DNA of 64,000 bases from Vitrella brassicaformis CCMP3155 (GCA_001179505.1 CDMY01000326.1:55752-119751); one strand, 5' to 3'; shown: positions 7,256 through 61,855, counted from the first letter of the stretch. Numbers and translations: made by a program. Notes: generated from the letters alone by a model not told the origin.

Positions 7256-8421
7256 ATGGCAAATGGCGGCTGCCACGATTTGGAGCCGCTGCCATTCATC
7301 GGCGGCCATGCGTCGACAGAGACCTGCTCTACGCCGACAAGGCACTCGCCGCCATTGAGCAGTCAGCCAAACAGATGCGCAAGAAGCTGCGGCAGCAAGC
7401 CAAGACGATCAAGGACCTGATCACGAGCAATGGAGGACAGCCGGTAGTGACAGGCTCGTTGAGTGAGGAGATTGAGGTCAATGTGGGCGGCGGGACGGTG
7501 CTGTGTGTGCCTCGCAAGCCGCTGCTGCTGCCCGGCGTGAGCGACTCGTTCGTCGCCTATCTGCTGCTGCACCATCTGGATGGGCTCCCCAAGGACACAG
7601 AGGGCCGGCCGTTCCTGGATGCTGACCCGATCTATATCGACTGGTTAGCCAGTAGACACACAGAGGGGAGGGAGGGCTCACGCGCAATGCTGTCTGTTGT
7701 GTTCCTTGTGTCAGGCTGTTTGACGAGATTGCCAACGTCGGTGCTGCTGATGCCCAGGGCGAGACGAAGGAGATCGTCTTCGAGCCAGGACCCGACGACC
7801 CCTTCTACCATGACCTCTTCTTCGACAACAAGATCTCATCGCAGCAGCAGCAGCAGAAGGATGCGTCAGCTCACGATCTCGGAGAGAAGAAGGACGCTGC
7901 CGGTGGGGCCAAGAAGGCCGCTGCTGTCGATGACCCCCTGAGCGACCTGCACACAAATGTCAAGAACCTCGAGACGGCGGTGGATCGGCTGTGGTCGGCA
8001 GAGCTGGAGCTGACCAAGTTCCATGCTGTGATGGGACCGTTCCTCAAGTCGGGGGGCGGCGGGGCCGATGAGATCAAGAGCGTGCGCGTGATGGGCAAGA
8101 GGGTGTCGACCACCGAGGCCACCTTGGCCTTCATCGGGCGGGACAAACCGCTGGGCACGGCATTCGACAGGTGCGAAGAGCACACGCACGCGGCAAGGCA
8201 CAAAACCCTCCCCTTCTCTCTGTTCCCTGTAGGAGTATGACGCTTTCGTGCATCTCGACTGCCCACTTCTCCAAGATCGTCGACTTCGCCCGAAGACAGC
8301 GCATTGCTCCCCGAGGGTCCCGTGTGCGAGCGCCCACCGCCCCGCCCAGCAATCAGCACCAGCTGCAAGTCGATCTGCAGATGTACGGCCTGCAGACGGC
8401 GGACATCTACACGCCCCTGAT
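7256..8421 (+). pseudogene. BTB-BTB-TLDc family copy 1 (subfamily A); 1-bp deletion near 7303, 3' part lost in gap
   Basis: EVNVGGGTVLCVPRKPLL...LLLHHLDGLPKD...DPIYIDW and RVMGKRVSTTEATL...KIVDFARRQR. Compared with copy 3 (atc ggc cgc cca), copy 1 reads atc ggc ggc cat, shifting frame; an upstream ATG at 7165 could bypass the shift. Confidence 0.8.
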
Positions 8422-8721
8422 NNNNNNNNNNNNNNNNNNNNNNNNNNNNNNNNNNNNNNNNNNNNNNNNNNNNNNNNNNNNNNNNNNNNNNNNNNNNNNN
8501 NNNNNNNNNNNNNNNNNNNNNNNNNNNNNNNNNNNNNNNNNNNNNNNNNNNNNNNNNNNNNNNNNNNNNNNNNNNNNNNNNNNNNNNNNNNNNNNNNNNN
8601 NNNNNNNNNNNNNNNNNNNNNNNNNNNNNNNNNNNNNNNNNNNNNNNNNNNNNNNNNNNNNNNNNNNNNNNNNNNNNNNNNNNNNNNNNNNNNNNNNNNN
8701 NNNNNNNNNNNNNNNNNNNNN
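8422..8721. other. Assembly gap (300 N)
   Basis: Run of N. Confidence 1.
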
Positions 8722-9480
8722 CTACTTCGAGCATGACCAGGAGCTTTCCCTGGTTGCGGACGTTGCTCCAGTCCTCCCCATCGCCTCGGGTGATGGCCAG
8801 ACACATGTACCACCGCACCAGCATCTTGTGGAGCAGGGCATATGTGATAATGGCCACGGCCACGATGAGCGGCACCGTCATCCGCCGCCACCAGACATCG
8901 CCCATCCCATGCGCCCTGGTCTCGAACCACAGCACAACGGCGTACACGATCCACGCAAGGGAGAATATCACACCGGCGGTCTTGAGGGTCTCCTGCAGGC
9001 AGACAGACAGATGCATTGCCGGTACGCGTGTCGATGTGCTGACAGGCCAGCTGACTGACCTGAGTGTCTTCCTTGCAGAGCCTCTGGTACTGGAACTCCA
9101 GCTCGGGATCTTTGAATTTCATGCAGATGAAAGGCAGACCCGACCACTGCACACGACACACACGATGAAAACGCATCATTCTATTCTCCCTCCCCCTCCC
9201 CCCCTCCCTCCCTCCCTCTGACCCGATTGACGCATCCGATTGACCCCCATTTGCTCTTGAAGCTCTTGACGAACTTGCCGCAGTAGGCGAAGATGCTGGC
9301 CGGCACGAGCATCTCGATGGCCACGTTGATGTTGGCATTGGCGCTGTTAGACATCCCGGTGACATGTTCGCTGTGCAGCTGCATCTGGGTCAGCCGGTCG
9401 CTCTTCTCGACCTTCTGGTGCTGTTCTTTGGCCTTATTGTCGCCGCCTGCCCAGATCTCCCTCCTTCTTTTCTCTGCGAG
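8722..9480 (-). CDS. 5' fragment of a multi-pass membrane protein, possibly the N-terminus of a nucleotide cyclase or phosphodiesterase; truncated by gap
   Basis: Three spliceable exons give ...GSIGCVNR|WSGLPFICMKFKDPELEFQYQRLCKEDTQ|ETLKTAGVIFSLAWIVYAVVLWF...VPLIVAVAIITYALL. An FxDxELExxY motif precedes the hydrophobic helices. Confidence 0.45.
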
Positions 9481-9528: not shown

Positions 9529-11525
9529 ATGTTTCCGAAGAAGCGTAGAGCAGAGGGCGCACCTGAGGTGTCTGAAGACGATGGCGACGAGTTTGAGCCG
9601 CTGCCAATCATCGGCCGCCATTGTGTTGACAGAGCGTTGAAGGAGGCCGACGAGGCGCTCGCCGCCATCGAGCAGTCGGCCAAACAGATCCGCAAGAAGC
9701 TGCGGCAGCAAGCAGCGACGATTCGCGACCTGATCACAAGCAATGGCGGACAGCCGATGGTGACGGGCCCGTTGAGTGGTGAGATCGAGATCAACGTGGG
9801 CGGGACGGTGCTGTGTGTGCCTCGCAAGCCGCTGCTGCTGCCCGGCGTGAGCGGCTCGTTCGTCGCCTATCTGCTGCTGCACCATCTGGATGGGCTGCCC
9901 AAGGACACAAAGGGCCGGCCATTCATCGACGCTGACCCAATCTACATGGACTGGTGAGCCAGTCGACATACTGAGGGCAGGGAGGGCACACAAAGTCAAC
10001 ATAATGCTGTCTGCTGTACCTCCTGCTGTATCTGTTGGTGTCAGGTTGTTTGACGAGATTGCCAACGTCGGTGCTGCAGATGCCCAGGGCGAGACGAAGG
10101 AGATCGTCTTCGAGCCAGGGCCCGACAGCAGTGTGCCATCCGACCCCTTCTACCATGACCTCTTCTTCGACAACAAGATCTCATCGCAGCAGCAGCAGCA
10201 GAAGGATGCGTCAGCTGACGATCTCGGAGAGAAGAAGGACGCTGCCGGTGGGGCCAAGAAGGCCGATGCTGTCGATGACCCCCTGAGCGACCTGCGCACG
10301 AGTGTCGAGAGCCTCGAGACGGCGGTGGATCGGCTGTGGTCAGCAGAGCTGGAGCTGACCAAGTTCCATGCTGTGATGGGACCGTTCCTCAAGTCGAAGG
10401 GCGGCGGGGCCGATGAGATCAGGAGCGTGCGCGTGATGGGCAAGAGGGTGTCGACCACCGAGGCCACCTTGGCCTTCATCGGGCGGGACAAACCGCTGGG
10501 CACGGCATTCGACAGGTGCGAAGAGCACACGCACGCGGCAAGGCACAAAACCCTCCCCTTCTCTCTGTTCCCTGTAGGAGTATGACGCTTTCGTGCATCT
10601 CGACTGCCCACTTCTCCAAGATCGTCGACTTCGCCCGAAGACAGCGCATTGCTCCCCGAGGGTCCCGTGTGCGAGCGCCCACCGCCCCGCCCAGCAATCA
10701 GCACCAGCTGCAAGTCGATCTGCAGATGTACGGCCTGCAGACGGCGGACATCTACACGCCCCTGATGCTGCCCCACGAGATGCAGGCCGTCATCGAGATG
10801 ACCGGCAAAGAGAACGCCAAGACCGAGCTGCTCTTCAAGTGACACGAGCATCACTCAGACGGAAGGAGAGGAAACTTGGCACCTATGTGTTGCCCGTTGT
10901 GGTCGTCAGGTCCAGTCGTGATGGCAAGGCGTACCCCAAGATGCTCAGCAGCGCCCAGGGCAAGAGCGGCCTGCTGTTCGCCCTTCAGGACAACGACACA
11001 CACCGATTCGGCACCTTCATCGATGGAGAACTCACATCACCTGACGACCCCGACGACACCGACGACTACAGTGTGCCGGTCTTCTTCTTTTCGCTGAGTG
11101 GCGCTTACAATGCACCGACCAAGATCGATGTGCCAGAGGAGGACCAGGAGGTGGCGGTGGCCGGCACAGAGGGGGCGGTGGAGGACGACAAGGAGCGGCC
11201 GCGTGCGAATGTCTGCATTGGTGACGGCTATCTGTGGCTCGGATATGGTGATGATGGTCCTGCAGCCGACCTCAGCAGCTGCAATCAGCGGATGCCGAAG
11301 GACCTTTTGCTGGGTATCACGGAAAGATCGATCGAGATGGCGACGGGTGTCTGGCCACCGCCAGCTGCTTCACATTCCTCGATATGGAAATATGGCAGGT
11401 ACGGCACCTGGGAGCTCGACGGGAGCACCGGATAGGTGACCGATGGCCTTTTGTGTTAATGTGTGTGCAGGTGGTGTGTGTTGATGGGGAGCGACTGAGC
11501 GGATCTGATCTCAACACCACGTAGA
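9529..11525 (+). pseudogene. BTB-BTB-TLDc family copy 2 (subfamily A); frameshift in TLDc near 11310
   Basis: Exons ~9529-9954, 10046-10515, 10579-10837, 10910-11397. TLDc reads SSRDGKAY...GLLFALQDNDTHRFGTFIDG...FFFSLSG...LWLG. The expected tail GYHGKIDRDGDGCLATASCFTFLDMEIWQ is in the -1 frame. Confidence 0.85.
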
Positions 11526-13052
11526 TGGCCGTCTGAGGTAGGAAGATAGCACAAATGGATGGATGGATGGATGGACGGATTACTCTCTCTTTTTCTCTCT
11601 CTGTGTATGTGTGTGCGTGTGTGTGCAGTCAGTCGCGTGTACACCAACCCCGCGCATTGCATGCTTCTTGTGCGTGCGTGCGACACTCACTGGTCGACTG
11701 ATTGATTCATCTGATTCAGTCATTCATGTGTGCATGGTCTTGACACATATCGGATGCATCAACAGACACAAAAAATACTTGCAACACACGTATGTATCAA
11801 TCAGTGACACGACGCACACACACACATACACAGGCATCAATCAATCACATGCACACATCCGGCAAGGCCGCCACACAACACTGTATAGGTACACACCCGC
11901 TGCCTCCCCCCTCTCGGGTACATACCTGTGTGTGTGTCCATCCACATCTGGTCTGGTGTGGTCTCTCTGTATGTGGTTTGTGCACAGAGAGGAGGAAGGG
12001 CACCCGCTTCTGATGTCTGTTGACGGGACGGCCCGGCCGATCGGCAAAGGATCATCAATATCGCCTTTCCTATCGAAGCCAATCAGCACCAACACACACA
12101 CGCCACGACGCGGGTGTCTCTGTGCGTGCATGCAACGTTTTTGTGTTGACGTCAGTTGTTAGTGCTGTGCTCGATTGTCTCGCCACGTTTGTCGTGTCTC
12201 ACATATCAGTATATCTGTTTCTGTATCCCATCCCTCCGCCCCCCTTATCACTCTCGCCATTCCTTCCGCCCGTCCGCCTCACAGACACAGGCAGGGAAAG
12301 GATTGTGTCAACGCACATCTGAGCAAAGAAGTGAGTGAGTGAGTAAGTGAGTATGGGTACGCACACACAGGCAGACACAGAGACATCGGAGAGATGGAGA
12401 GAGTCAGCCAGCATGATTGGTACGCGCACACAGAAACGAAAACGTCGGAGCAAAAAGCGATTGTCACGGGCCGGGAACCCCTTCCTCCCTCCCTCTATCT
12501 GTCTCTTCCGGCAACCGGCCCACACCCCGACCAGCACTTTGACGCGCACACACACAGGGAAGAGTATCTGCGCACACACACTCATACATACGGAGGGTGC
12601 GTGGCGGTGCAATTTCTCCGCGCACACACAGCCATGTCGTAAGTGTCTGGCCAGGTGTGTGTCTTACCTCCTCCGACCGAAGTGCCTTAGCTTGCCGGCC
12701 CATTAATGTGCAGCCTTCGATACGAAGGTCGCTATGCCCAAAGCTTTGACTTTGGATAGATGATGACATATGTCGTTTCAGAAACCTCATGCATGTCAGA
12801 TCCGTCCACGCAGTGAGGACACATTGTGTCTCAGAAACGCACAACAAGTCTCAGAAACCAACCGACCTCTCAATCCGTCCACCCATGCGTGCAGGCATAC
12901 GTATTTCCTGCCTGCCTGCCTGCGCTCATTGTATTGCTGCCGATACATGGCGTACCTGACGTCACCACACCGACAGACGCCACTCACTCAAACACACTCA
13001 CATCACACTTGCCACACTTGCATGCAGACAGCTCCCTTCCTTTGTGTACTTG

Positions 13053-15398: not shown

Positions 15399-15436
<38 letters not shown>

Positions 15437-19762: not shown

Positions 19763-21806
19763 TCAGCCGCTCACCACCTGCACACACACATACAGCAGCG
19801 TTGGGCCACGACCAGCCATTGATATGTGCCCTCCCCGCCCCCTCACCCACTCACCTGCCACACTTCCATCTCATCGCACGTGAAGTCTTTGGACTGCGCC
19901 AGTGTGCCTTTGCCCTGCACACTGATCGTCCCCTTGTATCCCTCCGACAGCTCATCCCTGTTGATCCACTGCTGGCAGCTGCTGAGGTCGGCCCCGGGCC
20001 AGGACGGCCATGTCCCAGCCACAGATGGCCGCCGCCGATGCTCACATTGGCACGCGGCTGGCCTTCGTCGTTCTCCACCACCCCCTGTGTGCCGGCCACA
20101 GACACCATCTGCCTGTCCTCCTCCGGCACCTCGATCTTGGTCGGCGTCTCGTACGCACCCGACAGCGCGTAGAGGAAGACCGGCGCCTCGTACCCGTTGG
20201 TCTTTGTGGGGTCAGCGGGTAGCTTGACCTCTCCGTCGACAAAGCATCCGAATCGGTGCGTGTCGCCATGTCGGAGGGCGAAGAGGAGGCCGCTCTTGCC
20301 CACCACCTTGTCGAGGAAGGAGGGATAGGCAAACGTGTCACGACTCGACCTGACGGACATCACACAACAGACACACCCGAAGGCAGATCTTCAGGGCCCT
20401 TCCGTTGCCGCCTTTTGTGGCTCGCTGACTTGTATAAGAGTGACGGCATTGGTGAGGTGTTGCCCGTCATGTTGAGCACCTCGCCCCACTCCTCGGCCGT
20501 CTCGATGACCAAGTTGCCCCCCGCCACGCCGCTGCAGAGGGGCTCGTACTTCAGCCCATGCATCTCAGTGTCCGTCCGAATCTGCTTGGTCCTGGTCGAT
20601 GTCGGCGGCATGACCAGAGTGTCGAAGGGTGCGATCCGTTGTCTGCGGGCGAAGTCGACGACCTTCATCAGATGCGAAGGCGAGATGGAAATCACAGGCG
20701 CACCACTGCAGACACAGAGCGAAGAGCGCAACGCTGTTGCTGTTCCTGTTGCTGCGGCTGTGTTGCTGGTGTTGTGTTGCCCACCTGTGGAATGTCCTGT
20801 AGAGTAGTTTGTCGCTGCCAACACGCGCCAGTGTGGCCTCGGTGGTCGACACCGTCTTGCCCATCACCCGCACGCTCTTGATCTCATCGCCCTCCCCTCC
20901 CTCGTCAGTCGCCAGCAACCGCTTCACGAGCTTGTGGAACCAGACCAGGTCCGCCTCTACGCCGCCCAGCCGCCCCACTGATGCATCGAGGCTTGCGATG
21001 CTGTTGTGGAGGTCCACCAGGTGGTCGGCCGCATCCTCACTCTCACCCTCGTCGTTCCAGCCCTCGTGGTCCTGTTGCTGCTCTCGCGCTTCCTGCTGCT
21101 GCTGGTCGTCCACCTCCATGTGGTCGTCATCGGCTCGCGGCGGCGGGTCTGTGGGCATGTCGATGTCGAGGCCGGTGATGGTGGTGAAGAGGAACTCATG
21201 CCAGAAGAGGGAGGAGCTGTCACTGTCGTGCGGCGGTGTGAGGACGATCTCGGTCGTCTCGGCTTGTGCATCGGCCACACCGACGCTGGCCACCTCGTTG
21301 AACAACCTGACACCAACAGATACAACAGACAGCATTGCGCGTGAGCCCGTCTGCCCTGCCCCCTTCTCTGTGTGTCGACTGGCTCACCAGTCGATGTAGT
21401 TTGGATCAGCGTCGAGGAACGGGTGGCCGTCTGTGTCCTTGGGCAGCCCATCCAGATGGTGCAGCAGCAGATAGGCGATGAACGAGTCGCTCACGCCGGG
21501 CAGCAGCAGCGGCTTGCGCGGCACACACAGCACCGTCCCGCCCACGTTGATCTCAATCTCCTCACTCAACGGCGCCGTCACTATCGGCTGTCCGCCATTG
21601 CTCGTGATCAGGTCCTTGATCGTCTTGGCTTGCTGCCGCAGCTTCTTGCGCATCTGTTTGGCTGACTGCTCGATGGCGGCGAGCGCCTCGTCGGCCTTCT
21701 GCAGCTCTCTGTCAATTGCTGGGCGGCCGATGAATGGCAGCGGCTCCAAATCGTCGCAGCCGCCATTTTCCATGGTAAGCGACTCGCCTTTCCTCTCCGT
21801 TGCCAT
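19763..21806 (-). pseudogene. BTB-BTB-TLDc family copy 3 (A-type N-terminus, C-type linker); frameshift in TLDc near 19993
   Basis: EINVGGTVLCVPRKPLL, RVMGKTVSTTEATL, KVVDFARRQR, then TLDc SSRDTFAYPSFLDKVVGKSGLLF. It reads cctggcccggggccgacc where the family has cctggtccggcggccgacc (1-bp loss), so DLSSCQQW...FTCDEMEVWQ lies in another frame. Confidence 0.85.
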
Positions 21807-21975
21807 GCGGGGGAGAAAAAGGACGCGAGCTTTTTGCGAGCTTTTCTCCGCAGAGAAGCAAAAGGCAAGGAGGCTTACATTGGGGTGGAGGAGAGCCCAA
21901 ACATTACGGCTGTGCCAAAGATCTGCCGAAAACGAGTGAAAGGACAAGCATCTGCATCCCCATCTCTCACGCACG

Positions 21976-23610: not shown

Positions 23611-23645
<35 letters not shown>

Positions 23646-24103: not shown

Positions 24104-24140
<37 letters not shown>

Positions 24141-29430: not shown

Positions 29431-29612
29431 CACTCGTCACGCTGCGGAGCTGCGATGGGGCGGCGATGGACTCACCACCGGCTGCGTTGGCCATTGCTAA
29501 ATCTGGGGAATGGCAGATTCCGCTTGCTTTGCTGCCGTTGGAGCTCGCAGCAAACCGTTGGCACGTCGGGTGATGGAGAAAACCCTGCAGGAGGAAGGCA
29601 GAGATGGATGGA

Positions 29613-44242: not shown

Positions 44243-45568
44243 CGCACGGCAGCGGAGGAAGACATGAGGCGGCGGGGTGGGGGTGTGGTGGGGAACAGGA
44301 GAGGGAGGGGGCGAGGGCCGCCCCTTTCCTTTGCCTGAAGTGCCTTATGCGCTGCTCTCACTCTTCTCATAGAGACCTATGTGCTACTTGGCCTTTATGC
44401 GGCTCTTGTGGTGGCGGTGCGGTGCTGGTAGATGGCTGATCGGTGCCCCACAGACCCCACTGTTTCTACGTTTACGCTTGTCTGTACACTGTAGCTGCTG
44501 CTTGATGTGGTGTCTGTGTGGTGCATGGTGTCATGTCGTCATCGATGGGGGGAGGGGCACATGTGTGTGTGTGGTGCGCCGTGCTGATGAACGGCTGGAT
44601 CACATTATGGGTGACATCAGCGGCTCCATATTTGTCTTTCTGCTTCCTGGGGATGGTCCACGTCGCTGTAATGACAGTCTGCAAGCCGGCGGATCGAGGA
44701 AGAAGTTTTCCTGTGTGACGTACGTGTGCAGACGTTTGTGTGTGTGTGTGTCCATATTGCATTGTGCACACAGCCAGAGAAGCAGACAGCCCCGCACTGT
44801 TCGTGATCAAACAAGCGATAGACACTGCGACACGCTGGTGTGCCGTTTCTTTGATGACGGACGATTCGCTGTTTGATGCGCTCGCCGTATGTACGCGATT
44901 GATTGGCGCCGTGCTGCGGTGCGATGTAACGTGCTCTTGTGTTCCATCGACAGACCGACCACGTGGCTGCCGTGGGGTGCATGTGTAGAGCGTGAACTGT
45001 TTTCATGCATGCCACGATGCAAGCAGGGCGGTCATCGTCTGTGTGCTGTCCGTGGACGGGGGGATTCAGGGAGCATCTGTGTGTGTGTCATTCGCTCCGC
45101 CTGTCTGTCTATGTGTCCATCGTGTGCACTGATCCTGGTCACTCCATCCATGAGGCTGCGTGAGTGAAGGAATGACTCCCTTCTGCACAAGTTGTTGACA
45201 TCGATCTGTGCAATGGATGCTTGTGCGAGCAGTGAGTGACTGCATCGGTCTGTTTTGTCTGTGTGTCTCCACAGAACGACCGGTACTGTACCTGCACCGT
45301 CCGTCCAGGCTGACGACTAGCAAACATTGAATACAGCGAAAAGCACCGCCTTTTATGAATCAAACAGCCGCCATTTCTCGAGAGGCACCCACCACACTGC
45401 TTGTGAGGATGCCGGCGGGTCCAACAGGCGGAAACCTGCCCGATCTCTCGGCGAGTGCCGGATCGCTGCACTTGAGGCTCGCATCTCGACGTATTCCTTC
45501 CGGTCATTCTGAACGGCTCGAGCGGCTCGTCTGTCGTCCTGCCTCCCCATCTCGCATCGCCGGCAAAC

Positions 45569-47396
45569 ATGAGAGGCGTCGATGCCGCCAAGCGGCTGGT
45601 GGCCGAGCTGGAGAAGCGGACTCTCATCGTCAACAGACTGATCACTGCCAGCGGAGGACAGCTGACGGTCACTGAGCCGCTGGATGGCGAGATCGAGATC
45701 AACGTGGGCGGGACGGTGCTGTGTGTGCCTCGCAAGCCGCTGCTGCTGCCCGGCGTGAGCGACTCGTTCATCGCCTATCTGCTGCTGCACCATCTGGATG
45801 GGCTGCCCAAGGACACAGACGGCCACCCGTTCCTCGACGCCGATCCAATCTATATGGACTGGTGAGCCAAGCGACACAGAGGGGAGGGAGGGAGGGCAGA
45901 CGAACTCACACAGAATAGTGTCTGTTGTGTTTCTTGTGTCAGGCTGTGCAACGAGGTGGCCAACGTCGGCGCCGCGGATGCGCAGGCCGAGACCCATGAG
46001 ATCAAGCTGACCGGTGACCACAGCACCGACAACGCGTCGCTCTTCTGGCACGAGATCTTCTTCGCTAACAAGATAGATCTCAACATCACGCGCCAGGACC
46101 GCCAAGATGCAGACATGGGCGAGGCATCAGCAGACGCCAGTACCCCTCTGGGCGCTCTCAATCGCAGCGCCGTGAGCGTCGAGAAGGCCCTGGACGACAT
46201 CAAGACGGCCGTGCGGCAGGTCATGGATGAGCATCAGCAGCTGCTCAAGTTCCACCGTGTGATGGGGCCGTTCCTCAAGTCGGCTGATGGCCAAGGCGAT
46301 GAGATCAAGGGCGTGCGTCTGATGGGCAAGACGGTGTCGACCACTGAGGCCACACTGACATTCATCGGCACTGACAAACGACTGTACACCACATTCGACA
46401 GGTGACACACAACGACGGGATGGCAAACACACGTCCAGGGGGGACATTCATCTCATTGGCCGCTTCTTGTGTGTTGCAGCACTGGGCCGGTAACGTGCAT
46501 CTCGCCCGCCCACTTCATGAAGGTCGTCGACTTCGCTCGCCGACAGCGAGTCGCATCCGTTGGCGACATCGTTAAGCCGCCCACGGCCCCAAATCAGCGG
46601 CAGCTCACCACCGACTGCTCCATGTACGGCCTCACCACGGAGAGTGTGAGCGGGCCCGTCCTCTGGGCCGACGAGATGCAGTGGATCATCGAGTTGACAA
46701 AGAAACGCAATGTCACGACCACACTGCTCTTCAAGTGAGTGGCAAAGGAAGGCGTGTGGGTGCGGGGGGCTGCATCGTGTGTGTGTGTTGATCAGGTCCA
46801 GTCGTGACACTTTTGGGTACCAGTCCTTCCTCAACAAGGTGACCGGCAAGAGCGGCCTGCTGTTCGCCCTCAGACATGGCGACACACACCGATTCGGCTG
46901 CTTCATCGACGGCCAGCTCAAGCCACCAAACGACCTTACACAGACGAGCGGCAAGTACGACGTGCCCCTCTTCTTCTACTCGCTCAGCGGCGCGTTCACT
47001 AAGCCCACCAAGATCGAGCTGCCGGGGCAGGGGCAGAAGGTTGAGGTGGCCGGCACACAGGGGGCGGTGAGGAGCAACAAGGGCCAGCCGATTGGCAAGG
47101 TGGCCATCGCTCGCGGCCGTCTTTGGCTGGGGTTTGCTCGGCCTGGTCCGGCGGCCGACCTCAGCAGCTGCCAGCAGTGGATCAGCAAGGATGACATTCC
47201 CAACGGATATGGCGGCGAGATCAATACGAAGGATGAGACCTTCCTACACCTAGCCAGTCGACCTGACTTGACGTGTGATGAGATGGAGGTGTATCACCTG
47301 CAGGTAAACCAGTGGGATGAAAAGGCAACCGAAACACAGCTACATGGGTGTGAATGCGTGTTCGTATGTGCCTCTCTGCAGGTCAACGGCGCATGA
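45569..47396 (+). CDS. BTB-BTB-TLDc family copy 8 (subfamily A2), apparently intact
   Basis: Exons ~45569-45862, 45943-46401, 46480-46735, 46796-47303, 47382-47396, all phase-compatible; TLDc ends FTCDEMEVYHLQ-like|VNGA*. Confidence 0.9.
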
Positions 47397-48407: not shown

Positions 48408-50466
48408 CATGTTTCAGCGACTCGCCATGATGCTGTCGGCCACTGGAGGCTCGAGGAGGCGAAGAAGCAGCGACCGCCAAGGCGGATCTGCCCCGGGAGC
48501 TGCTGCGTCATCTGCCGACTCATCTGAGTCAGTCACGCCATGTGAGCCGCAGCTGCAGAGCCTCACATGCGGTAGAGAGGAGGGAGATCTGGTGCTGAAG
48601 GAGGCTGCGGGATGCATCGACGACCTGAGGGAGATGGCCAAGACAGCGATGGGAGAGATGGAGCAGCTGGAGGATCAGATCAAGCAGCTGTTCGTCGCAA
48701 ATGGCGGCATCCTGCAGCCACGGCAGACAGAGGACCGCATTCGGCTCAATGTGGGCGGCACTGTCATGTCAATCCCCGTGTCGGCGCTTCTCCATCCCAA
48801 GATGAAGCAGACATACCTCTCGACGCTGCTTCTGCACTTCACCGACCAGCTGCCGAAGGACGCCAATCAGCTGCCATTCCTCGAGATGCACCCGCCCTAC
48901 TTCCGCTGGCTGCGTGACCAGCTGGCGCTGCTCGAGAGCCCCCACCTCGATGAGATCAGCCTGCACTCACCGGAGGCCGACGATCCCTCTCATGCCGAGT
49001 ACCACTCGCTGTTCATGCAGACGCTGGGCGGTGCCATCGAGATTGGGGAGCAGCCACAGTCAACTGGCACGGCGGCAGAGGGCGGCGGGGAGGGCGGCGC
49101 AGAGAGAGGCTTTCGGCAGATGGAGCAGTGCATGCGACGCTACGAGGGCCTGCTCGACGGGCTTCGCAAGCAGAAGGAGAAGATGGAGGCCTTCTTGGTG
49201 GCCATGGGGCCGTTCATCAAGGGTGACAGCAGCGATGAGGACACCCAGGTGATGACACTCAGTGTGTCTGATGAGGATGTGTCGGTCCTCCGCCGTACGA
49301 TGGCCCTTCTCGGGCCAGACCATGTGCTTGTGAAGCGGTTTGACCGGTGCGAAAGCGAAAGAGCAGCACAGAGGACGATGACACATTGCCTGTGTGGGTT
49401 TCAGGACTCAGTGGCCCGACCAGGAGGTGCGCCAGACGTCCCTCAGGTTGCTGCAGCTCGTCGTCGACTTTGCCCGCCGTTTTGCCATGCCGTCCGGCCG
49501 ATTTGTCCATCCGCCGGTGGTGGCGCCGCACGAGAAGGCCATCTTCGGTGTCGAGTTGGGAATGTACGGCCTCAGTTCGATGCCGCCGGTGCCGGGGGAC
49601 AGCACGATCATCAAGACGGCCGACGAGTGGCTGGCGGTGATGAAGATGGCCGACAAGAGGATCGCTGTCGCGCCGTCACTGCTGTACAAGTGAGCTCAGA
49701 CAGACATGCCGGGCACACAGAGATCGTTGTTGTGCGCTGATATCAGGTCGAGTCGTGACACGTTTGGATATCCGTCTTTCCTCAACAATGTGACCGGCAA
49801 GAGCGGCCTGCTGTTCGCCCTCCGAGATGGCGACACGCACCGATTCGGAGCCTTCATCGATGGCGAACTCAAGCCACCAGACGACCCCAAGCAGGGCAAC
49901 ATCTACAAGGTGCCCGTCTTCCTTTATTCCCTGTCGGGTGCGTACGAGACGCCGACCAAGATCGAGCTACCCAAGGACAAGCAGACGGTGGGGGTGGCCG
50001 GCACAGAGGGGGCGGCGAAGGACAAGAACGACGTGCCGCGTGCCAATGTGGCCATTGCCAACGGCAGCCTCTGGTTGGGCTTTGCCAATCCTGGTCCGGC
50101 GGCCGACCTCAGCAGCTGCCAGCAGTGGATAAGGAGGCAGCACCTAGCGAACGGATACAGCGGCGGGATCAACACGAAGGATGATGAGGGCTACCTCGCC
50201 AGGAAGCTCAACTTCACTGCGAGCGAGATCGAGGTTTGGCACGTGCAGGTAACTCAGGGATATGAAAGGCGTTGGGCACACCGACATGTATCAGACTGTG
50301 TGTCTATGTCTTCTGCAGGCACCTCGCCAGCACGCTCAGCTTCACGTGCGATGAGATGGAGGTGTATCACGTGCAGGTAACCCAGTGAGATGGAAGGGTA
50401 ACGAGCACAGCTACATGGGTGTGAATGCGTGTTGTATGTGCCTCTCTGCAGGTCAACGGCGCATGA
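48408..50466 (+). CDS. BTB-BTB-TLDc family copy 9 (B-type N-terminus, A2-type 3' end)
   Basis: MFQRLAMML...RLNVGGTVMSIPVSALL...FLEMHPPYFRW, RFDR|, QWPDQEVRQ...LLYK|SSRDTFGY TLDc; terminal exon VNGA*. Confidence 0.88.
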
Positions 50467-51541: not shown

Positions 51542-51841
51542 NNNNNNNNNNNNNNNNNNNNNNNNNNNNNNNNNNNNNNNNNNNNNNNNNNNNNNNNNNN
51601 NNNNNNNNNNNNNNNNNNNNNNNNNNNNNNNNNNNNNNNNNNNNNNNNNNNNNNNNNNNNNNNNNNNNNNNNNNNNNNNNNNNNNNNNNNNNNNNNNNNN
51701 NNNNNNNNNNNNNNNNNNNNNNNNNNNNNNNNNNNNNNNNNNNNNNNNNNNNNNNNNNNNNNNNNNNNNNNNNNNNNNNNNNNNNNNNNNNNNNNNNNNN
51801 NNNNNNNNNNNNNNNNNNNNNNNNNNNNNNNNNNNNNNNNN
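51542..51841. other. Assembly gap (300 N)
   Basis: Run of N. Confidence 1.
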
Positions 51842-53536
51842 GACAGCTGACGGTCACTGAGCCGCTGGATGGCGAGATCGAGATCAACGTGGGCGGGACG
51901 GTGCTGTGTGTGCCTCGCAAGCCGCTGCTGCTGCCCGGCGTGAGCGACTCGTTCATCGCCTATCTGCTGCTGCACCATCTGGATGGGCTGCCCAAGGACA
52001 CAGAGGGCCGCCCGTTCCTCGATGCTGACCCAATCTACATGGACTGGTGAGCCAGTCGACATACTGAGGGGAGGGAGGGCCGACGAACTCACAGGATGGT
52101 GTCTGTTGTGTTTCTTGTGTCAGGCTGTTCAACGAGATTGCCAACGTCGGTGTGGCGGATGCCCAGGCCGAGACCCACGAGATCAAGCTGACCGGTGACC
52201 ACAGCACCGACAGCGCGTCGCTCTTCTGGCATGAGATCCTCTTCGCCAACAAGACAGATCTGAACATCACGCGCCAGGACCGCCAAGACACCGCCATCGA
52301 CGACGCATCAAGCACCGGTACGCCCCTGAACGCTCTCGATCGCAGCGCCGCGAGCGTCGAGAAGGCCCTGGACGACATCAAGACGGCTGTGCAGCAGGTG
52401 ATGGACGAGCACCAGCAGCTGCTCAAGTTCCACCGTGTGATGGGGCCGTTCCTCAAGTCGGCTGATGGCAAAGGCAATGAGATCAGGAGCGTGCGGGTCA
52501 TGGGCAGGACGGTGTCGACCACTGAGTCCACACTGGCACTCATCGGCACTGACAAACGACCTACACCACTTTCGACAAGTGAGTGACACATAACAATGAG
52601 ATGGCATTCATCTCATTGGCCGTTTCTTGTGCGTTGCAGCACTGGGCCGGTAACGTGCGTCTCTGCCGCCCACTTCATGAAGGTGGTCGACTTCGCTCGC
52701 CGACAACGTCTCGCATCCGTCGGTGGCATCGTCAAGCCGCCCACCGCCCCGAATCAGCGGCAGCTCACCACCGACTGCGGCATGTACGGCCTCACCACGG
52801 AGAGTGTCAACGGCCCCGTCCTCTGGGCCGACGAGCTGCAGTGGATCATCGACTCGACAAAGAAAGGCAACGCCACACTGCTCTTCAAGTAAGTCGCAAA
52901 AGTGTGAGGCAGGAGGGGCTGCATCGTGTGTGTGTATTGATCAGGTCGAGTCGTGACACGTTTGGGTACCAGTCCTTCCTCAACAAGGTGACGGGCAAGA
53001 GCGGCCTTCTGTTCGCCCTCCGAGACGGCGACACACACCGATTCGGCTACTTCATCGACGGCCAGCTCAAGCCACCAAATGACCGCACAGAGACCACCGG
53101 CCCCTACAAGGTGCCCCTCTTCTTCTTTTCGCTGTCGGGTGCGTACGAGACGCCGACCAAGATCGAGCTGCCGGAGGAGGCCCAGTGCGTGGACGTGGCC
53201 GGCACACAGGGGGCGGCGAAGGCCAGAAATATGGATTGGCGCGCGAATGTGGCCATCGCCTGTGGCCGTCTGTGGCTCGGCTTCGATGAGCCTGGTCCGG
53301 CGGCTGACCTCAGCCGCTGCTATCAGTGGATCAAGGAAGGGGAGCTGCAAGCGAAATACAAGGGAAATATCAACAGCAACGGCAACGGCACACTGGCGCG
53401 GACGTCCAGCTTCACGTGCGATGAGATGGAGGTGTATCACGTGCAGGTAAACCAGTGGGATGAAAAGGCAACGGAAACAGCTACATGGGTGAGGATGCGT
53501 CTTGTATGTGCCTCTCTGCAGGTGAACGGCGCATGA
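51842..53536 (+). CDS. BTB-BTB-TLDc family copy 10 (subfamily A2), 5' end lost in gap
   Basis: QLTVTEPLDGEIEINVGG...DPIYMDW, RVMGRTVSTTESTL, KVVDFARRQR, LLFK|SSRDTFGY TLDc, VNGA*. Confidence 0.88.
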
Positions 53537-56878: not shown

Positions 56879-58796
56879 ATGTTTCAGCGACTCGCCATGA
56901 TGGTGTCGGCCTCTGGAGGTTCGAGGAGGCGAAGAAGCAGCGACCGCCAGGGCGGATCTGCCCCGGGAGCTGCTGCGTCATCTCCCGACTCATCTGAGTC
57001 AGTCGCCCCATGTGAGCCGCAGCTGCAGAGCCTCACATGCGGTAGTGAGGAGGGAGATCTGGTGCTGAAGGAGGCTGCGGGATGCATCGACGACCTGAGG
57101 GAGATGGCCAAGACGGCGATGGGCGAGATGGAGCAGCTGGGGGAGGAGATCAAGCAGCTGTTCGTCGCAAATGGCGGCAGTCTGCAGCCGCGGCAGACAG
57201 AGGACCGCCTTCGGCTCAATGTGGGCGGCACTGTTATGTCAATCCCCGTGTCGGCGCTTCTCCATCCCAAGATGAAGCAGACGTACCTCGCGACGCTGCT
57301 GCTGCACTTCATCGACGCCCTGCCCAAGGATGCCAATCAGCTGCCATTCCTCGAGATGCATCCGGCCTACTTCCGCTGGCTGCGTGACCAGCTGGCACTG
57401 CTCGAGAGCCCCCACCTCGACGAGATCAGCCTGCACTCACCGGAGGCCGACGATCCCTCTTATGCCGAGTAGCACGGGCTGCTCATGCAGACGCTGGGCG
57501 GTGCCATTGAGATTGGGGAGCAGCCACAGTCAACTGGCACGGCGGCAGAGGGCGGCGGGGAGGGCGGCGCGAAGAGAGGCTTTCGGCAGATGGAGCAGTG
57601 CATGCGGCGCTACGAGGGTCTGCTCGAGGGGCTTCGCAAGCAGAAGGAGAAGATGGAGGCCTTCTTGGTGGCCATGCGGCCGTTCGTCAAGGGTGACAGC
57701 AGCGATGAGGACACCGAGGTGATGACACTCGGTGTGTCTGATGAGGATGTGTCGGTCCTCCGCCGCACCATCGCCCTCTGCGGACCAGACCATGTGCTTG
57801 TGAAGCGGTTCGACCGGTGGGAGAGCGAAGGAGCAGCACACAGGACGATGGCACATGGCCTTGTTCGTCTGTGTGAGTTGCAGGACTCAGTGGCCCGACC
57901 AGGAGGTGCGCCAGACGTCCCTCAGGTTGCTGCAGCTTATCATCGACTTTGCCCGCCGTTTGTCGGTCATGCCCCCCTCCCGGTTTGTGCATCCGCCGGT
58001 CGTCGCGCCGCACGAGAAGGCCATCTTCGGTGTCGAGCTGGGAATGTACGGCCTCAACACGGTGCCTTCAAACAGCACGATCATTCAGACGGCCGACGAG
58101 TGGCTGGCGGTGATGAAGATGGCGGACAAGAGGATCGCTGTGGCGCCGTCGCTGCTGTACAAGTGAGCTCAGACAGACATGCCGGGCACACAGACATGGC
58201 TGTCGTGTGTGCTGATCTCAGGTCGAGTCGTGACACCTTTGCGTATCCCTCCTTCCTTAACAAGGTGGAGGACAAGAGCGGGCTGCTCTTCGCCCTCAAG
58301 CAGGGCGACACACACCGATTCGGCGCCTTCATCGACGGCCAGATCAAGCCACCACACGACCCCACGCACGCCAACTTCTACAAGGTGCCCTCTTGTTCTT
58401 TTCGCTGTCGGGTGCGTACGAGACGCCGACCAAGATCGAGCTGCCGGAAGAGGCACAGAAGGTGGACGTTGCTGGCACGCAGGGGGTGGTGAAGGATATC
58501 AAGGACGAGCCGTTTGGGAACGTCTGCATCGCCTGCGGCCGTCTCTGGCTGGGATTCGCTCAGCCTGGTCCGGCGGCCGACCTCAGCAGCTGCCAGCAGT
58601 GGATCGCGAAGAAGGAGGTGCCCGACGGCTACAAGGGGACGACCGTCAATGAGGAGGGCGCCGGCACACTGGCGCGGTCCATGAACTTCACGTGCGAAGA
58701 GATCGAAGTGTGGCAGGTGGGCGCAAGAGAGCAAGCACACCACTGGTGTGTCTTTCTGTCTGTCCGTCTTTCTGTGTGCAGGTGGGGAGCGGCTGA
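56879..58796 (+). pseudogene. BTB-BTB-TLDc family copy 11 (subfamily B); nonsense mutation plus frameshift
   Basis: gccgagTAGcac at 57470-57472 where paralogs have gccgagTACcac; the TLDc frame breaks near 58388 (gtgccctcttgttc vs family gtgcccctcttcttc). Confidence 0.9.
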
Positions 58797-59873
58797 ACCG
58801 ATCTGACGGCACCCATATAGACAGCGGCAGGGGCCGGTGAGACGACACTACACACACACATTTCTCAGCCAACAGAGTCGAACACACTGCTGGCCTTGTT
58901 GTTGTCGCTCTCTGTGGGTATAGTGGTCATTTTGCAATGTGTGTGAGAGTGTGATTTAGGTAGTCAATCCCATCGGCTGTCTGGCTGGCCGCGCATCCGT
59001 GTGTATGTTGACCTGGCTGTGAATGGACGGATAGACCATCGATCTCATCAGACACACACATGATTGATGAGTCGGGCCCCTCCTGACAGACAACACACAC
59101 ACACACACACAGCCATACGTCCATGTCTGTCTTCCCTTGCTCTACCTGCCGAAGCACCACCACACACGGACACAGACACACGACACATCGCTCCGGCCCC
59201 CCTCACAAAGAAGCTTCACACACACACACCGGGGGTTCGATTGAGTCAACCACATGATCGTGGACCGGTCTTGAAGGCCCCGGGAAGGCACACACTCAGT
59301 TTCAGTGGTCATTGTGGGTGGATGTCTGAGTGTGATTTCGGTAATCAATCCCGTCGGTTGTGCGTCTGTGTTGGTGGATGGATGGATGGATGTGCTGCAC
59401 TCATTGACACACGCAATACAGCCAGACAGACAGACGAACAGCCTTTCGTCAGGCGCTCAACACCATTTACGACCCGTCGTCAGTTTCTCAATGAAGTTAG
59501 CAACAAAAAGGAAAACGACTGCCATGCAAAATGCGCAGAACGAGTAAGTGTCAGATGTCCTGTCTGCTCAAGAGTCGCATGTCTGCATGCACCCTTTTCC
59601 CGTCACCATAGCTCATCCCGCTCTCCCACTGCCCTCCTCCTCTCTCCCGTTCCTTTCCGAAATCTCCGTGAAACCCCAATTAGCTATGCCATACACACAA
59701 AGACCATCCATCTCTATATAATTCATCATTTGGCAGATGAGCATGGCGCCAGCGAGCCGGCTACTCGTCCTGCTTCTTGTGGCACATCATGGGCAAAGCG
59801 TCATTGCAGGTCCGCACCATGCAATCCGATCGCCAGCAAGCTTGCAAACCACCCCTCTTCTCGCGCCCCCAGC

Positions 59874-61855
59874 ATGTTTCAGCGACTCGCCATGATGCTG
59901 TCGGCCTCTGGAGTCTCGAGGAGGCGAAGAAGCAGCGACCGCCAGGGCGGATCTGCCCCGGGAGCTGCTGCGTCATCTGCCGACTCATCTGAGTCAGTCG
60001 CCCCATGTGAGCCGCAGCTGCAGAGCCTCACATGCGGCCGAGAGGAGGGAGATCTGGTGCTGAAGGAGGCTGCGGGATGCATCGGCGACCTGAGGGAGAT
60101 GGCCAAGACGGCGACAAGAGAAGCGATGGGCGAGATGGAACAGCTGGCGGAGGAGATCAAGCAGCTGTTCGTCGCAAATGGCGGCAGTCTGCAGCCGCGG
60201 CAGACAGAGGACCGCCTTCGGCTCAATGTGGGCGGCACTGTTATGTCTATCCCCGTGTCGGCGCTTCTCCATCCCAAGATGAAGCAGACGTACCTCTCGA
60301 CTTTGCTGTTGCACTTCAGCGACCAGCTGCCCAAGGACGCCAATCAGCTGCCATTCCTCGAGATGCACCCGGCCTACTTCCGCTGGCTGCGTGACCAGCT
60401 GGCACTGCTCGAGAGCCCCCACCTCGACGAGATCAGCCTGCACTCACCGGAGGCCGACGATCCCTCTTATGCCGAGTACCACTCGCTGTTCATGCGGACG
60501 CTGGGCGGTGCCATCGAGATTGGGAATCAGCCACAGTCAACTGGCACGGCGGCAGAGGGCGGCGGGGAGGGCGGCGCGAAGAGAGGCTTTCGGCAGATGG
60601 AGCAGTGCATGCGGCGCTACGAGGGCCTGCTCGAGGGGCTTCGCAAGCAGAAGGAGAAGATGGAGGCCTTCTTGGTGGCCATGCGGCCGTTCGTCAAGGG
60701 GGACAGCAGCGATGAGGACACCGAAGTGATGACACTGAGTGTGTCTGATGAGGATGTGTCGGTCCTCCGCCGCACCATCGCCCTCTGCGGGCCAGACCAT
60801 GTGCTTGTGAAGCGGTTTGACCGGTGCGAGAGCGATAGAGCAGCACAGAGGACGATGACACATGACCTTGTTCGTCTGTGTGGGTTTCAGGACTCAGTGG
60901 CCCGACCAGGAGGTGCGCCAGACGTCCCTCAGGTTCCTGCAGCTCGTCGTCGACTTCGGCCGCCGTTTGTCGGTCATGCCCGCCGGCCGCTTTGTCCATC
61001 CGCCGGTGGTGGCGGCGCACGAGAAGGAGATGTTCGCCGTCGAGCTGGGAATGTACGGCCTCAACACAATGCCGCCTGTGGGTGAGGCGGCGGGGGCGTC
61101 CGCTGTGATCAAGACGGCCGACGAGTGGCTGGCGGTGATGGCGATGACAGACAAGAAGATCGCTGTAGCGCCATCACTGCTGTACAAGTGAGATGCAGCA
61201 CTCACACGCCAGAGGCAGCTGACAGGCCGAGACCACACTGTCCTTCTGTGTGTCAATCAGGTCGAGTCGTGACACATTCGCGTATCCGTCCTTCCTCAAC
61301 AAGGTGACCGGTAAGAGCGGTCTGCTGTTGGCCCTCCGAGACGGCGACACACACCGATTCGGCTGCTTCATCGACGGCCAGATTAGACCGCCAGACGACT
61401 TCAGACAGGCCAACTACTACGATGTGCCCGTCTTCTTCTATTCGCTGTCGGGTGCGTACGAGACGCCCACCAAGATCGAGGTGCCCGAGGAGAAGCAGCA
61501 GATGGAGGTGGCTGGCACACAGGGGGTGGCGAAGGCCAACAATATGGACTGGAGTGCCAATGTGTGCATCGCTGGCGGCCAGCTGTGGCTGGGGTGGGCT
61601 CAGCCTGGTCCTGCGGCCGACCTTAGCCGCTGCCAGCAGTGGACCGCGAAGAAGGGGGTGCCCGACGGCTACAAGGGGACGACGGTCAATGAGGAGGGCG
61701 CCGGCACACTGGCCAGCAGGCTCAACTTCACGTGCAGCGAGATGGAGGTGTGGCAGGTGGGTGTGAGCGACGAAAAGGGAGCACATATGGGTGGCTGGCT
61801 GCTCGTGGCCAACACTGCTGTGTCTGTCTGTGTGCCGCAGATGGGGAGCGGCTGA
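59874..61855 (+). CDS. BTB-BTB-TLDc family copy 12 (subfamily B), apparently intact
   Basis: MFQRLAMMLSASG...RLNVGG...RFDR|...LLYK|SSRDTFAYPSF TLDc...EMEVWQ|MGSG*. Confidence 0.9.

What the first reader, a model, noticed from the sequence alone, without database searches (positions are those of the whole stretch)
7256..61855. Twelve-copy BTB-BTB-TLDc gene family: candidate variable-receptor / ubiquitin-adaptor repertoire
Seen: 12 loci on both strands, interspersed among unrelated housekeeping genes, all with coiled coil - NV/AGG-type BTB - second BTB-like unit (R/TVxGxxVS...VDFARR) - TLDc. They form three N-terminal subfamilies: A (copies 1,2,3,6,8,10), B (4,9,11,12), C (5,7). Known: BTB domains oligomerise and many are Cullin-3 adaptors; TLDc domains (OXR1/NCOA7) bind V-ATPase and are linked to oxidative-stress resistance; nematode MATH-BTB and F-box families are rapidly evolving adaptor repertoires. 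Inference: this is a lineage-specific birth-and-death family in which TLDc serves as a diversified recognition module, possibly in defence or stress sensing. I do not know of this double-BTB-TLDc system being functionally described.
Basis: partly seen in the sequence, partly recalled or inferred. Interest (0 to 1): 0.85.

Follow-up and report, generated by a model that had tools for sequence, protein, structure and literature searches.

The report
Alga-specific double-BTB TLDc gene cluster
This stretch of the alga Vitrella brassicaformis holds twelve copies of a gene family so far seen almost only in this species, whose proteins join two self-assembling BTB parts to a TLDc part; about half the copies are intact, and front and back halves have been swapped among copies.

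Summary
The window is the last 64 kb of Vitrella brassicaformis contig CDMY01000326.1. It carries 12 paralogous loci built as helix, T1/KCTD-type BTB, helix, second divergent BTB, TLDc.

- **Domains:** both BTB folds and the TLDc are supported by profile searches, and the BTB folds also by AlphaFold2 with fold search.
- **State of the copies:** copies 5, 7, 8, 9 and 12 are intact, and copy 4 is intact except for a rearranged 5' leader. Copies 1, 2, 3, 10 and 11 carry frameshifts or a stop codon. Copies 1, 6 and 10 are cut by assembly gaps that sit exactly at repeat edges.
- **Transcription:** copy 2 is transcribed and spliced.
- **Distribution:** relatives are almost all from Vitrella (28 of 30 sampled). 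There are at least 39 full-length clusters on at least 14 contigs.
- **New point:** the N-terminal module and the TLDc exon have discordant histories, which indicates gene conversion or exon exchange.
TLDc is the most conserved domain. Variability is limited to three loops.
- **Function:** a role as Cul3 adaptor, V-ATPase partner or defence receptor is untested. A conserved KKRK motif suggests a nuclear location.

First-stage notes flag the same family elsewhere in this genome.

The parts
7247..8421 (+). Copy 1 (subfamily A): leader, helix, BTB1, helix and part of BTB2. It has a 1-nt deletion near 7310, and its 3' end is lost in gap 8422-8721.
   Evidence: Exons 7247-7643, 7715-8170 and 8233-8421. 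The last 522 nt are 98% identical to copy 2.
8422..8721 (.). Assembly gap that truncates copy 1.
   Evidence: similarity to copy 2 runs to the gap edge, and the sequence after the gap is unique.
9529..11783 (+). Copy 2 (A): full architecture, transcribed and spliced. A frame change near 11307 replaces the last part of TLDc.
   Evidence: Exons 9529-9953, 10045-10515, 10581-10838 and 10910-11398. Transcript L002 matches at 99-100% without the introns and without an indel at the frame change.
19852..21809 (-). Copy 3 (A): full architecture with a 1-nt deletion in TLDc near 19994. Its BTB2-to-TLDc linker is of the subfamily C type.
27428..29545 (-). Copy 4 (B): open from BTB1 through TLDc. The 5' leader is rearranged, with duplicated helix-1 pieces in different frames.
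   Evidence: The public model P0014 is 5'-partial.
29604..31791 (+). Copy 5 (C): intact, six exons, head-to-head with copy 4 about 60 bp away.
   Evidence: Exons 29604/29667-29892, 29968-30595, 30693-30855, 30935-31071, 31143-31674 and 31777-31788.
33061..33699 (+). Copy 6 (A): 5' fragment (helix and BTB1), cut by gap 33700-33999.
   Evidence: It is 92.7% identical to copy 8 over 887 nt up to the gap edge.
33700..33999 (.). Assembly gap that truncates copy 6.
42107..44200 (+). Copy 7 (C): intact.
   Evidence: Exons 42107-42323, 42427-43048, 43132-43294, 43367-43503 and 43564-44104 onward.
45568..47396 (+). Copy 8 (A): intact.
   Evidence: The public protein P0180 matches at 100% over 502 residues.
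48409..50380 (+). Copy 9 (B): intact.
   Evidence: Exons 48409-49346, 49405-49689 and 49747-50245 onward.
51542..51841 (.). Assembly gap that removes the 5' end of copy 10.
51844..53536 (+). Copy 10 (A): BTB1 through TLDc, with a 1-nt deletion near 52560. It is annotated publicly as two genes.
   Evidence: P0116 and P0192.
56879..58803 (+). Copy 11 (B): TAC to TAG stop at 57470-57472 and a 1-nt deletion near 58390. It is annotated publicly as two genes.
59874..61855 (+). Copy 12 (B): intact, 585 aa, identical to the public protein P0001.
   Evidence: Exons 59874-60823, 60891-61187, 61261-61756 and 61841-61852.

Best explanation
This is a tandemly clustered multigene family, so far seen almost only in Vitrella brassicaformis.

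Shown here:
- The proteins, about 510-630 aa, are built as a short leader (often with a KKRK basic cluster), a long helix, a T1/KCTD-type BTB domain, a second long helix, a second divergent T1-type BTB domain, and a C-terminal TLDc domain.
- The two helix-plus-BTB units are an internal duplication.
- The family evolves by duplication, decay and exchange between copies. About half of the window's copies are intact and five carry frameshifts or a stop codon.
- The N-terminal module and the TLDc exon with its 3' flank have separate histories, as expected from gene conversion or exon exchange between neighbouring copies.

Inferred, not shown:
- The BTB units make the protein self-assemble into oligomers, as T1 and KCTD domains do.
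- Several TLDc heads would then be displayed together on one scaffold.
- The KKRK cluster suggests that this happens in the nucleus.
- The scaffold may recruit Cullin-3, as many KCTD proteins do.
For: - **Loci and gene models:**
- **TLDc:** Pfam E 1e-7 to 2e-12. A TLDc profile hits only TLDc chains in the PDB.
- **BTB1:** a profile hits the SHKBP1 and KCTD16/17/9/7/5 BTB domains, E 2.6e-7 to 1e-2. The AF2 model has pLDDT 84. All Foldseek top-50 matches are BTB folds, nearly all KCTD/Kv T1 (E from 9e-5, probability 1.0).
- **BTB2:** the profile hits KCTD9, E 0.0034. The AF2 model has pLDDT 84. All top-50 Foldseek hits are BTB/T1. VIA-align gives Z 7.3-8.4 over 77-105 residues.
- **Internal duplication:** hhalign of the two units gives probability 90.5%, E 1.4e-6.
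- **Lesions:** seen at DNA level. Copy 2's frame change is also present in a spliced transcript.
- **Discordant histories:** the N-part tree resolves A, B and C at 100/100, while the TLDc tree is an unresolved star. A PHI-type test on the whole gene gives 0 of 2000 permutations as low as observed. For copies 9 and 12, dS is 0.08-0.21 in the N part and 0.50 in TLDc. Between subfamilies it is the reverse: 0.8-2.7 against 0.5-0.6. Sliding-window distances are mosaic.
- **Restricted distribution:** 196 hits among 1.84 billion representatives. 28 of 30 looked up are Vitrella or cluster with Vitrella.
- **Family size:** at least 39 full-length clusters on at least 14 contigs.
- **Basic cluster:** a KKRK-type cluster in 24 of 38 full-length models.
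Against: - Pfam BTB_2 does not reach its cut-off on the subfamily B relatives scanned (E 0.14-0.2) and gave no hit on the window ORF pieces. It does reach it on distant family members.
- BTB2 fold scores are middling (Foldseek E about 0.02, Z about 8).
- The AU test does not reject subfamily clades on the TLDc tree (p 0.18-0.27). Within the TLDc exon the PHI signal is borderline (p 0.05).
- The frameshifts in copies 1, 3, 10 and 11 could be assembly errors. Only copy 2's is confirmed independently.
- Oligomerisation, nuclear location and Cul3 binding are inferences with no test here.
- Transcripts were found for copy 2 and for members on other contigs, but not for the intact window copies.
Confidence: 0.8

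Rival explanations
1. The proteins are Cullin-3 substrate adaptors. One or both BTB units bind Cul3, and TLDc, through its variable loops, selects substrates. The family would then be a diversified ubiquitin-ligase receptor repertoire.
For: The best structural and sequence matches include the Cul3-binding KCTD5, 7, 9, 17 and SHKBP1. A relative, P0191, ends in a RING finger. The same scaffold carries another head in P0030, an L7Ae/Gadd45 domain. One TLDc loop window has pN/pS of 1 or more.
Against: KCTD16, the top structural match, and Kv T1 domains do not bind Cul3 (established knowledge of the KCTD family). No Cul3-contact test was run. TLDc is the most conserved domain, and its domain-wide dN/dS is below 1.
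Confidence: 0.3
2. The proteins are multivalent V-ATPase regulators. TLDc would bind the V1 sector as in OXR1, NCOA7 and mEAK7, and BTB oligomerisation would add avidity.
For: All five mouse TLDc proteins interact with V-ATPase (PMC8608904). The residues matching Ncoa7 G845 and E938 are kept in 33 and 31 of 36 members.
Against: The residue matching Ncoa7 G815, whose change to alanine abolishes binding, is T in 24 of 36 members and in 8 of 10 window copies. The KKRK leader points to the nucleus. In the same genome this TLDc subtype is fused to Tc5-type DNA-binding HTH domains. More than 100 paralogues is hard to square with one conserved partner.
Confidence: 0.15
3. The cluster is mostly decaying or non-functional DNA: a recently amplified gene whose copies are drifting into pseudogenes.
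For: Five of 12 copies have frameshifts or a stop codon. A sixth has a rearranged 5' leader. No transcript was found for the intact copies. dN/dS is 0.3-0.8 in several domains.
Against: Five copies keep ORFs of 510-590 aa across 3-6 exons with canonical splice sites. BTB1 dN/dS is 0.14-0.29 in most within-subfamily pairs. TLDc core motifs are nearly invariant across 36 members. Copy 2 and members on other contigs are transcribed.
Confidence: 0.15

Closest known systems
KCTD proteins and the Kv-channel T1 domain (Pfam BTB_2, PF02214)
   Same: Both N-terminal units have the T1-type BTB fold. BTB1 has the LNVGG start and the KD...FLD/E core. PDB profile hits reach E 2.6e-7 and all Foldseek top hits are KCTD or T1.
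   Different: There are two BTB units per chain, each preceded by a helix of about 40 residues. The C-terminal domain is TLDc rather than a KCTD C-terminal domain. BTB2 is strongly diverged. Oligomer state and Cul3 binding are unknown.
TLDc proteins (OXR1, NCOA7, TLDC2, mEAK7, TBC1D24/Skywalker)
   Same: The C-terminal domain matches PF07534 above its cut-off, and its profile hits only TLDc chains in the PDB. The residues matching Ncoa7 G845 and E938 are kept.
   Different: It is a divergent subtype. The family profile finds only 196 proteins in 1.84 billion representatives rather than all TLDc proteins. The residue matching G815 is mostly T. The subtype is expanded to more than 100 clusters (at 50% identity) in one species, against seven TLDc proteins in humans (PMC8329711 abstract).
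Insect BTB-BACK-TLDc proteins (Bombyx Bmmp, Drosophila CG7102)
   Same: BTB and TLDc lie in one polypeptide, and the BTB domain is essential for function in silkworm (bioRxiv 10.1101/2021.07.26.453796).
   Different: The insect proteins have a classical BTB plus a BACK domain and are described as one gene per species in the preprint. Here there are T1-type BTB units, no BACK domain and a large family.
Single BTB_2-TLDc proteins of other protists (Euglena longa P0148; ENA metagenome P0155)
   Same: A canonical BTB_2 is followed by TLDc. These were the only sampled hits that did not trace to Vitrella.
   Different: They have one canonical BTB, and their sequences are close to the Pfam models. 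There is no second helix-plus-BTB unit, and no expansion is known.
Rapidly evolving adaptor families (nematode MATH-BTB, F-box)
   Same: Lineage-specific tandem expansion with pseudogenes, and a constant scaffold joined to another domain.
   Different: In those families the substrate-binding domain is the fast-evolving part. Here TLDc is the slowest part overall, and positive selection has not been shown.

Membership tests
BTB_2 / T1-KCTD BTB (PF02214) | Sequence match to the family model | tested here: met
   Pfam on single subfamily B relatives (P0006, P0009) gives only E 0.14-0.2, below the cut-off, and no hit on window ORF pieces. The family profile A2 hits KCTD and SHKBP1 BTB chains at E 2.6e-7 to 1e-2. 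Distant members P0087 and P0158 pass the Pfam cut-off.
BTB_2 / T1-KCTD BTB (PF02214) | BTB alpha/beta core fold, first unit | tested here: met
   The AF2 model has pLDDT 84. The Foldseek top 50 are all BTB folds, nearly all KCTD or Kv T1, with TM 0.53-0.67 against the single-domain targets.
BTB_2 / T1-KCTD BTB (PF02214) | BTB fold, second unit | tested here: met
   The AF2 model has pLDDT 84. All 50 Foldseek hits are BTB/T1 with E 0.018-0.09. VIA-align gives Z 7.3-8.4. The profile hits KCTD9 at E 0.0034. hhalign against the first unit gives 90.5%. Scores are middling, so this unit counts as a divergent member.
BTB_2 / T1-KCTD BTB (PF02214) | Homo-oligomerisation (tetramer or pentamer) | not testable with these tools
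   No multimer prediction was available.
Cul3 substrate adaptor (KCTD type) | Direct binding of the BTB domain to the Cullin-3 N-terminal domain | not tested
TLDc (PF07534) | Sequence match above the Pfam gathering score | tested here: met
   28-48 bits against a cut-off of 24.5 on nine of the ten relatives scanned. On window pieces, 31.7 and 28 bits for copies 12 and 5, but 19.4, below the cut-off, for copy 2. All 10 PDB hits of profile A5 are TLDc chains.
TLDc (PF07534) | Conserved residues shown to matter for V-ATPase binding in Ncoa7 (G815, G845, E938) | tested here: inconclusive
   The G845 equivalent is G in 33 of 36 members and the E938 equivalent is E in 31 of 36. The G815 equivalent is T in 24 of 36 and G in 9 of 36.
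TLDc (PF07534) | Binding to V-ATPase | not testable with these tools
   This needs a pull-down or AP-MS.
Insect BTB-BACK-TLDc (CG7102 / Bmmp) | Classical BTB followed by a BACK domain | tested here: not met
   Pfam finds no BACK or classical BTB domain. The BTB units are of the T1 type.
Birth-and-death multigene family | Tandem paralogues, with pseudogenes, restricted to one lineage | tested here: met
   There are 12 loci in 55 kb, five of them with lesions. Further clusters lie on other contigs. 28 of 30 sampled relatives are Vitrella.

The most novel reading that the evidence does not exclude
Vitrella may run a combinatorial adaptor system. A self-assembling, nuclear double-BTB scaffold would be paired, through exon exchange between clustered genes, with interchangeable heads. 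TLDc is the commonest head, with L7Ae/Gadd45 and RING heads in relatives, and FKBP-like heads according to other first-stage notes. The variable TLDc loops would be under diversifying selection to recognise changing targets such as transposon or viral proteins. That would make it a ubiquitin-linked surveillance repertoire in a free-living relative of apicomplexan parasites.
Probability: 0.12. Interest if true: 0.8.

Novelty: new variant of a known kind. Interest (0 to 1): 0.55.

Why it matters
TLDc proteins are few in well-studied organisms, and their molecular role is still debated (V-ATPase regulation or oxidative-stress protection). Here one alga holds more than a hundred clusters (at 50% identity) of a single TLDc subtype. 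The largest architectural group, at least 39 full-length clusters at 90% identity, hangs TLDc on a duplicated T1-type BTB scaffold. That gives a natural set of variants for asking what TLDc binds and whether BTB-driven clustering matters. The discordant histories of the two gene halves also make this a clear case of modular gene evolution by exchange within tandem arrays. For chromerid and apicomplexan biology it is one more lineage-specific expansion to explain. The functional claims remain hypotheses.

Tried and rejected
- A full-length family profile against PDB sequences gave nothing relevant. Only domain-level profiles worked.
- Two scans of the JGI metagenome collection for spliced transcripts found nothing, one with peptide patterns and one with a degenerate exon-junction pattern. 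The sample that holds transcript L002 is evidently not in that collection. The transcription status of the intact copies therefore stays open.
- The AU tests did not reject subfamily clades on the TLDc tree. The discordance claim rests on the star-shaped tree, the dS contrast and the whole-gene PHI-type test instead.
- The PHI-type test inside the TLDc exon alone was borderline (p 0.05 with window 15, 0.34 with window 30).
- I considered that copies 1 and 2 might be an assembly duplicate. I rejected this because they differ at 2-8% over most of their length.
- I considered membership of the insect BTB-BACK-TLDc family and rejected it because there is no BACK domain.
- A literature search for Vitrella plus TLDc returned no paper.


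Full report
**Source and observation**

The window is the last 64 kb of contig CDMY01000326.1 of Vitrella brassicaformis CCMP3155. The public protein P0001 maps to copy 12 at 585/585 residues with four exons. tblastn with pieces of three copies finds 12 loci, ten on the + strand and two on the - strand. The frame changes inside each locus are GT-AG introns with GTGAG/GTAAG donors and CAG acceptors. Two intron positions are shared by all subfamilies: one after '...RFD' in the second BTB unit and one before 'KSSRD' at the start of TLDc. Unrelated genes lie between the copies: G6PD, a protein kinase, an SNF transporter, a mannosyltransferase and MRP-L27.

**State of each copy**

I wrote a protein-to-genome spliced aligner and validated it on copy 12. 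I ran it with references from each subfamily and then checked every lesion in DNA alignments against the closest paralogue.

| Copy | Subfamily | State |
|---|---|---|
| 5, 7, 8, 9, 12 | C, C, A, B, B | Intact. Copy 8 equals the public protein P0180. |
| 4 | B | Open from BTB1 to the end. Its 5' leader holds two helix-1 pieces in different frames, and the public model is 5'-partial. |
| 11 | B | TAC to TAG stop at 57470 and a 1-nt deletion near 58390. |
| 10 | A | 1-nt deletion near 52560; 5' end lost in a gap. |
| 3 | A | 1-nt deletion near 19994, in TLDc. |
| 1 | A | 1-nt deletion near 7310; 3' end lost in a gap. |
| 2 | A | Frame change near 11307 that replaces the end of TLDc. |
| 6 | A | 5' fragment only; the rest is lost in a gap. 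|

The public annotation splits copies 10 and 11 into two genes each, which fits real disruptions in the assembly.

**Assembly gaps**

Three gaps touch family copies: 8422-8721 (copy 1), 33700-33999 (copy 6) and 51542-51841 (copy 10). In each case paralogue similarity of 92-98% runs to the very edge of the gap. The other flank is not a continuation of that copy: it is unique after the first two gaps and is copy 9's 3' flank before the third. These are assembly breaks inside repeats. Nothing can be said about continuity or frame across them, so truncation of copies 1, 6 and 10 is not evidence of decay. The fourth gap (25059-25358) lies in the SNF transporter gene.

**Transcription**

A JGI contig (sample 3300017297, locus L002, 1847 nt) matches copy 2's exons at 99-100% with the introns removed. 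It also shows two further 3' introns. It has no indel across the frame change. Copy 2 is therefore transcribed and spliced, and its frame change is real. The 5' 315 nt of L002 resemble copy 1 more than copy 2, so the contig may be a chimera of paralogous transcripts. MMETSP transcripts exist for distant family members P0098, P0087 and P0077 and for cluster members P0161 and P0164, and P0058 is itself an MMETSP transcript. I found no transcript for the intact window copies. Two metagenome scans were empty.

**Domains**

- **TLDc.** It passes Pfam's cut-off. A TLDc profile hits NCOA7, zebrafish OXR2, mEAK7 and Skywalker and nothing else in the PDB.
- **First BTB unit.** Pfam BTB_2 is sub-threshold on single subfamily B relatives. 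The family profile hits SHKBP1 and KCTD16/17/9/7/5 BTB chains at E 2.6e-7 to 1e-2. The AF2 model (pLDDT 84) finds only BTB folds, nearly all KCTD or Kv T1, in the Foldseek top 50.
- **Second BTB unit.** The profile hits KCTD9 at E 0.0034. The AF2 model has pLDDT 84. All 50 best Foldseek matches are BTB/T1 at E 0.02-0.09. VIA-align gives Z 7.3-8.4 over 77-105 residues.
- **Internal duplication.** Profile-profile comparison of the two units, each with its preceding helix, gives probability 90.5% and E 1.4e-6. The protein is therefore an internal duplication of a helix-plus-BTB unit followed by TLDc. Each model has a helix of about 39 residues before the BTB core. Pairing of these helices as a coiled coil is not tested.

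**Distribution**

A full-length profile found only 196 proteins at E up to 1e-3 among 1.84 billion representatives. Of 30 looked up, 27 carry a Vitrella name and P0035 clusters with Vitrella proteins. The other two are a Euglena longa protein and an unnamed ENA metagenome protein, both with a canonical BTB_2 plus TLDc. At least 39 clusters at 90% identity have the full-length architecture, on at least 14 contigs, several of which carry arrays.

The same TLDc subtype also occurs in Vitrella in other contexts:
- behind Tc5-type HTH domains;
- in tandem TLDc arrays;
- after a lactate-permease domain.

The double-BTB scaffold also occurs with an L7Ae/Gadd45 head in P0030. A relative, P0191, ends in a RING finger. 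First-stage notes of this scan flag the same BTB-BTB-TLDc family, and BTB-BTB-FKBP fusions, elsewhere in this genome. I did not test the FKBP notes.

**Evolution**

Per-domain comparisons show two histories.
- Copies 9, 11 and 12 are 86-100% identical through BTB2, with dS of 0.03-0.24. Their TLDc domains are 67-76% identical, with dS of 0.40-0.60.
- Between subfamilies the N part is 17-41% identical, with dS of 0.8-2.7. TLDc stays 57-63% identical, with dS of 0.5-0.6.

Sliding windows show mosaic tracts. Copies 8 (A) and 12 (B) differ by 13% at residues 420-459. Copy 3 (A) carries a subfamily C-type linker. The 3' flanks are shared across subfamilies at 80-92%.

The N-part tree resolves A, B and C at 100/100. 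The TLDc exon tree is an unresolved star, with 0% of bootstrap trees recovering A or B. The AU test does not reject those clades (p 0.18-0.27). A PHI-type permutation test on the whole gene is significant, with 0 of 2000 permutations as low as observed. Within TLDc alone it is borderline. Gene conversion or exon exchange between cluster members is the simplest reading.

**Is TLDc the diversified part?**

Across 36 members the TLDc core has the lowest column entropy, 0.7-1.1 bits. The helices and linkers have the highest, 2.0-2.7 bits. Three TLDc segments are variable: residues 461-470, 501-520 and 541-570 in copy 12 numbering. Domain-wide dN/dS is 0.35-0.67. One window (491-525) reaches pN/pS of 1.1-2.2, but this comes from non-independent pairwise counts on a recombining alignment. 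It is a lead, not a result.

**Function (inference)**

- T1 and KCTD BTB domains oligomerise, so a multivalent scaffold is the most likely core property.
- Many but not all KCTD proteins bind Cul3.
- For V-ATPase binding, the residue matching Ncoa7 G815 is T in 24 of 36 members and in 8 of 10 window copies. G815A abolishes binding in Ncoa7 (PMC8608904). The G845 and E938 equivalents are kept.
- A KKRK-type basic cluster lies within the first 25 residues of 24 of 38 full-length models across subfamilies. It fits the classical monopartite nuclear-localisation pattern (my knowledge), so a nuclear role is plausible.

**Novelty**

BTB plus TLDc is known in insects as BTB-BACK-TLDc. A single BTB_2 plus TLDc exists in at least Euglena longa. 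No paper in the library mentions TLDc in Vitrella. What appears undescribed is the duplicated helix-BTB scaffold, the size of the expansion and the modular exchange between copies.

Noticed in passing
29366-29604: Copies 4 (- strand) and 5 (+ strand) are head-to-head, with only about 60 bp between their 5' ends. Copy 4's leader holds two helix-1 segments in different frames, one like P0007 and one like P0006. This looks like a recombination scar.
   Followed up: partly
L002:1-405 versus window 7333-7646 and 9645-9955: The spliced transcript contig matches copy 2 at 99-100% in its 3' 1.4 kb. Its 5' 315 nt match copy 1 (95.5%) better than copy 2 (91.7%). It may be a chimeric assembly of paralogous transcripts, or a strain difference.
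   Followed up: partly
Proteins P0034, P0038, P0042, P0046, P0032, P0023 (other Vitrella contigs): The same TLDc subtype is fused to Tc5-transposase-type HTH domains (four proteins) and to a lactate-permease domain, and occurs as four tandem TLDc domains. TLDc behaves as a promiscuous module in this genome.
   Followed up: partly
Proteins P0030 and P0191 (other Vitrella contigs): The double-BTB scaffold occurs with an L7Ae/Gadd45 C-terminal domain in P0030. A relative with BTB-like repeats, P0191, ends in a C3HC4 RING finger.
   Followed up: partly
First 25 residues of the family proteins, e.g. window 9529-9560 (copy 2) and 29604-29640 (copy 5): A KKRK/KKRR basic cluster is conserved near the N-terminus in 24 of 38 full-length models across subfamilies. 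It is a candidate nuclear-localisation signal.
   Followed up: partly
61856-62170, 58797-59111, 47913-47999, 50382-50780, 53452-53699: The 3' flanks downstream of the TLDc exon are 80-92% identical between copies of different subfamilies. They probably hold short terminal exons and the 3' UTR, as transcript L002 shows for copy 2.
   Followed up: partly
22239-26000: An SNF-family (sodium:neurotransmitter symporter) gene is interrupted by assembly gap 25059-25358.
   Followed up: no
35586-37205 (-), 38794-41103 (-): Two long ORFs (539 and 769 aa) between copies 6 and 7 have no Pfam match at E 1e-3.
   Followed up: no
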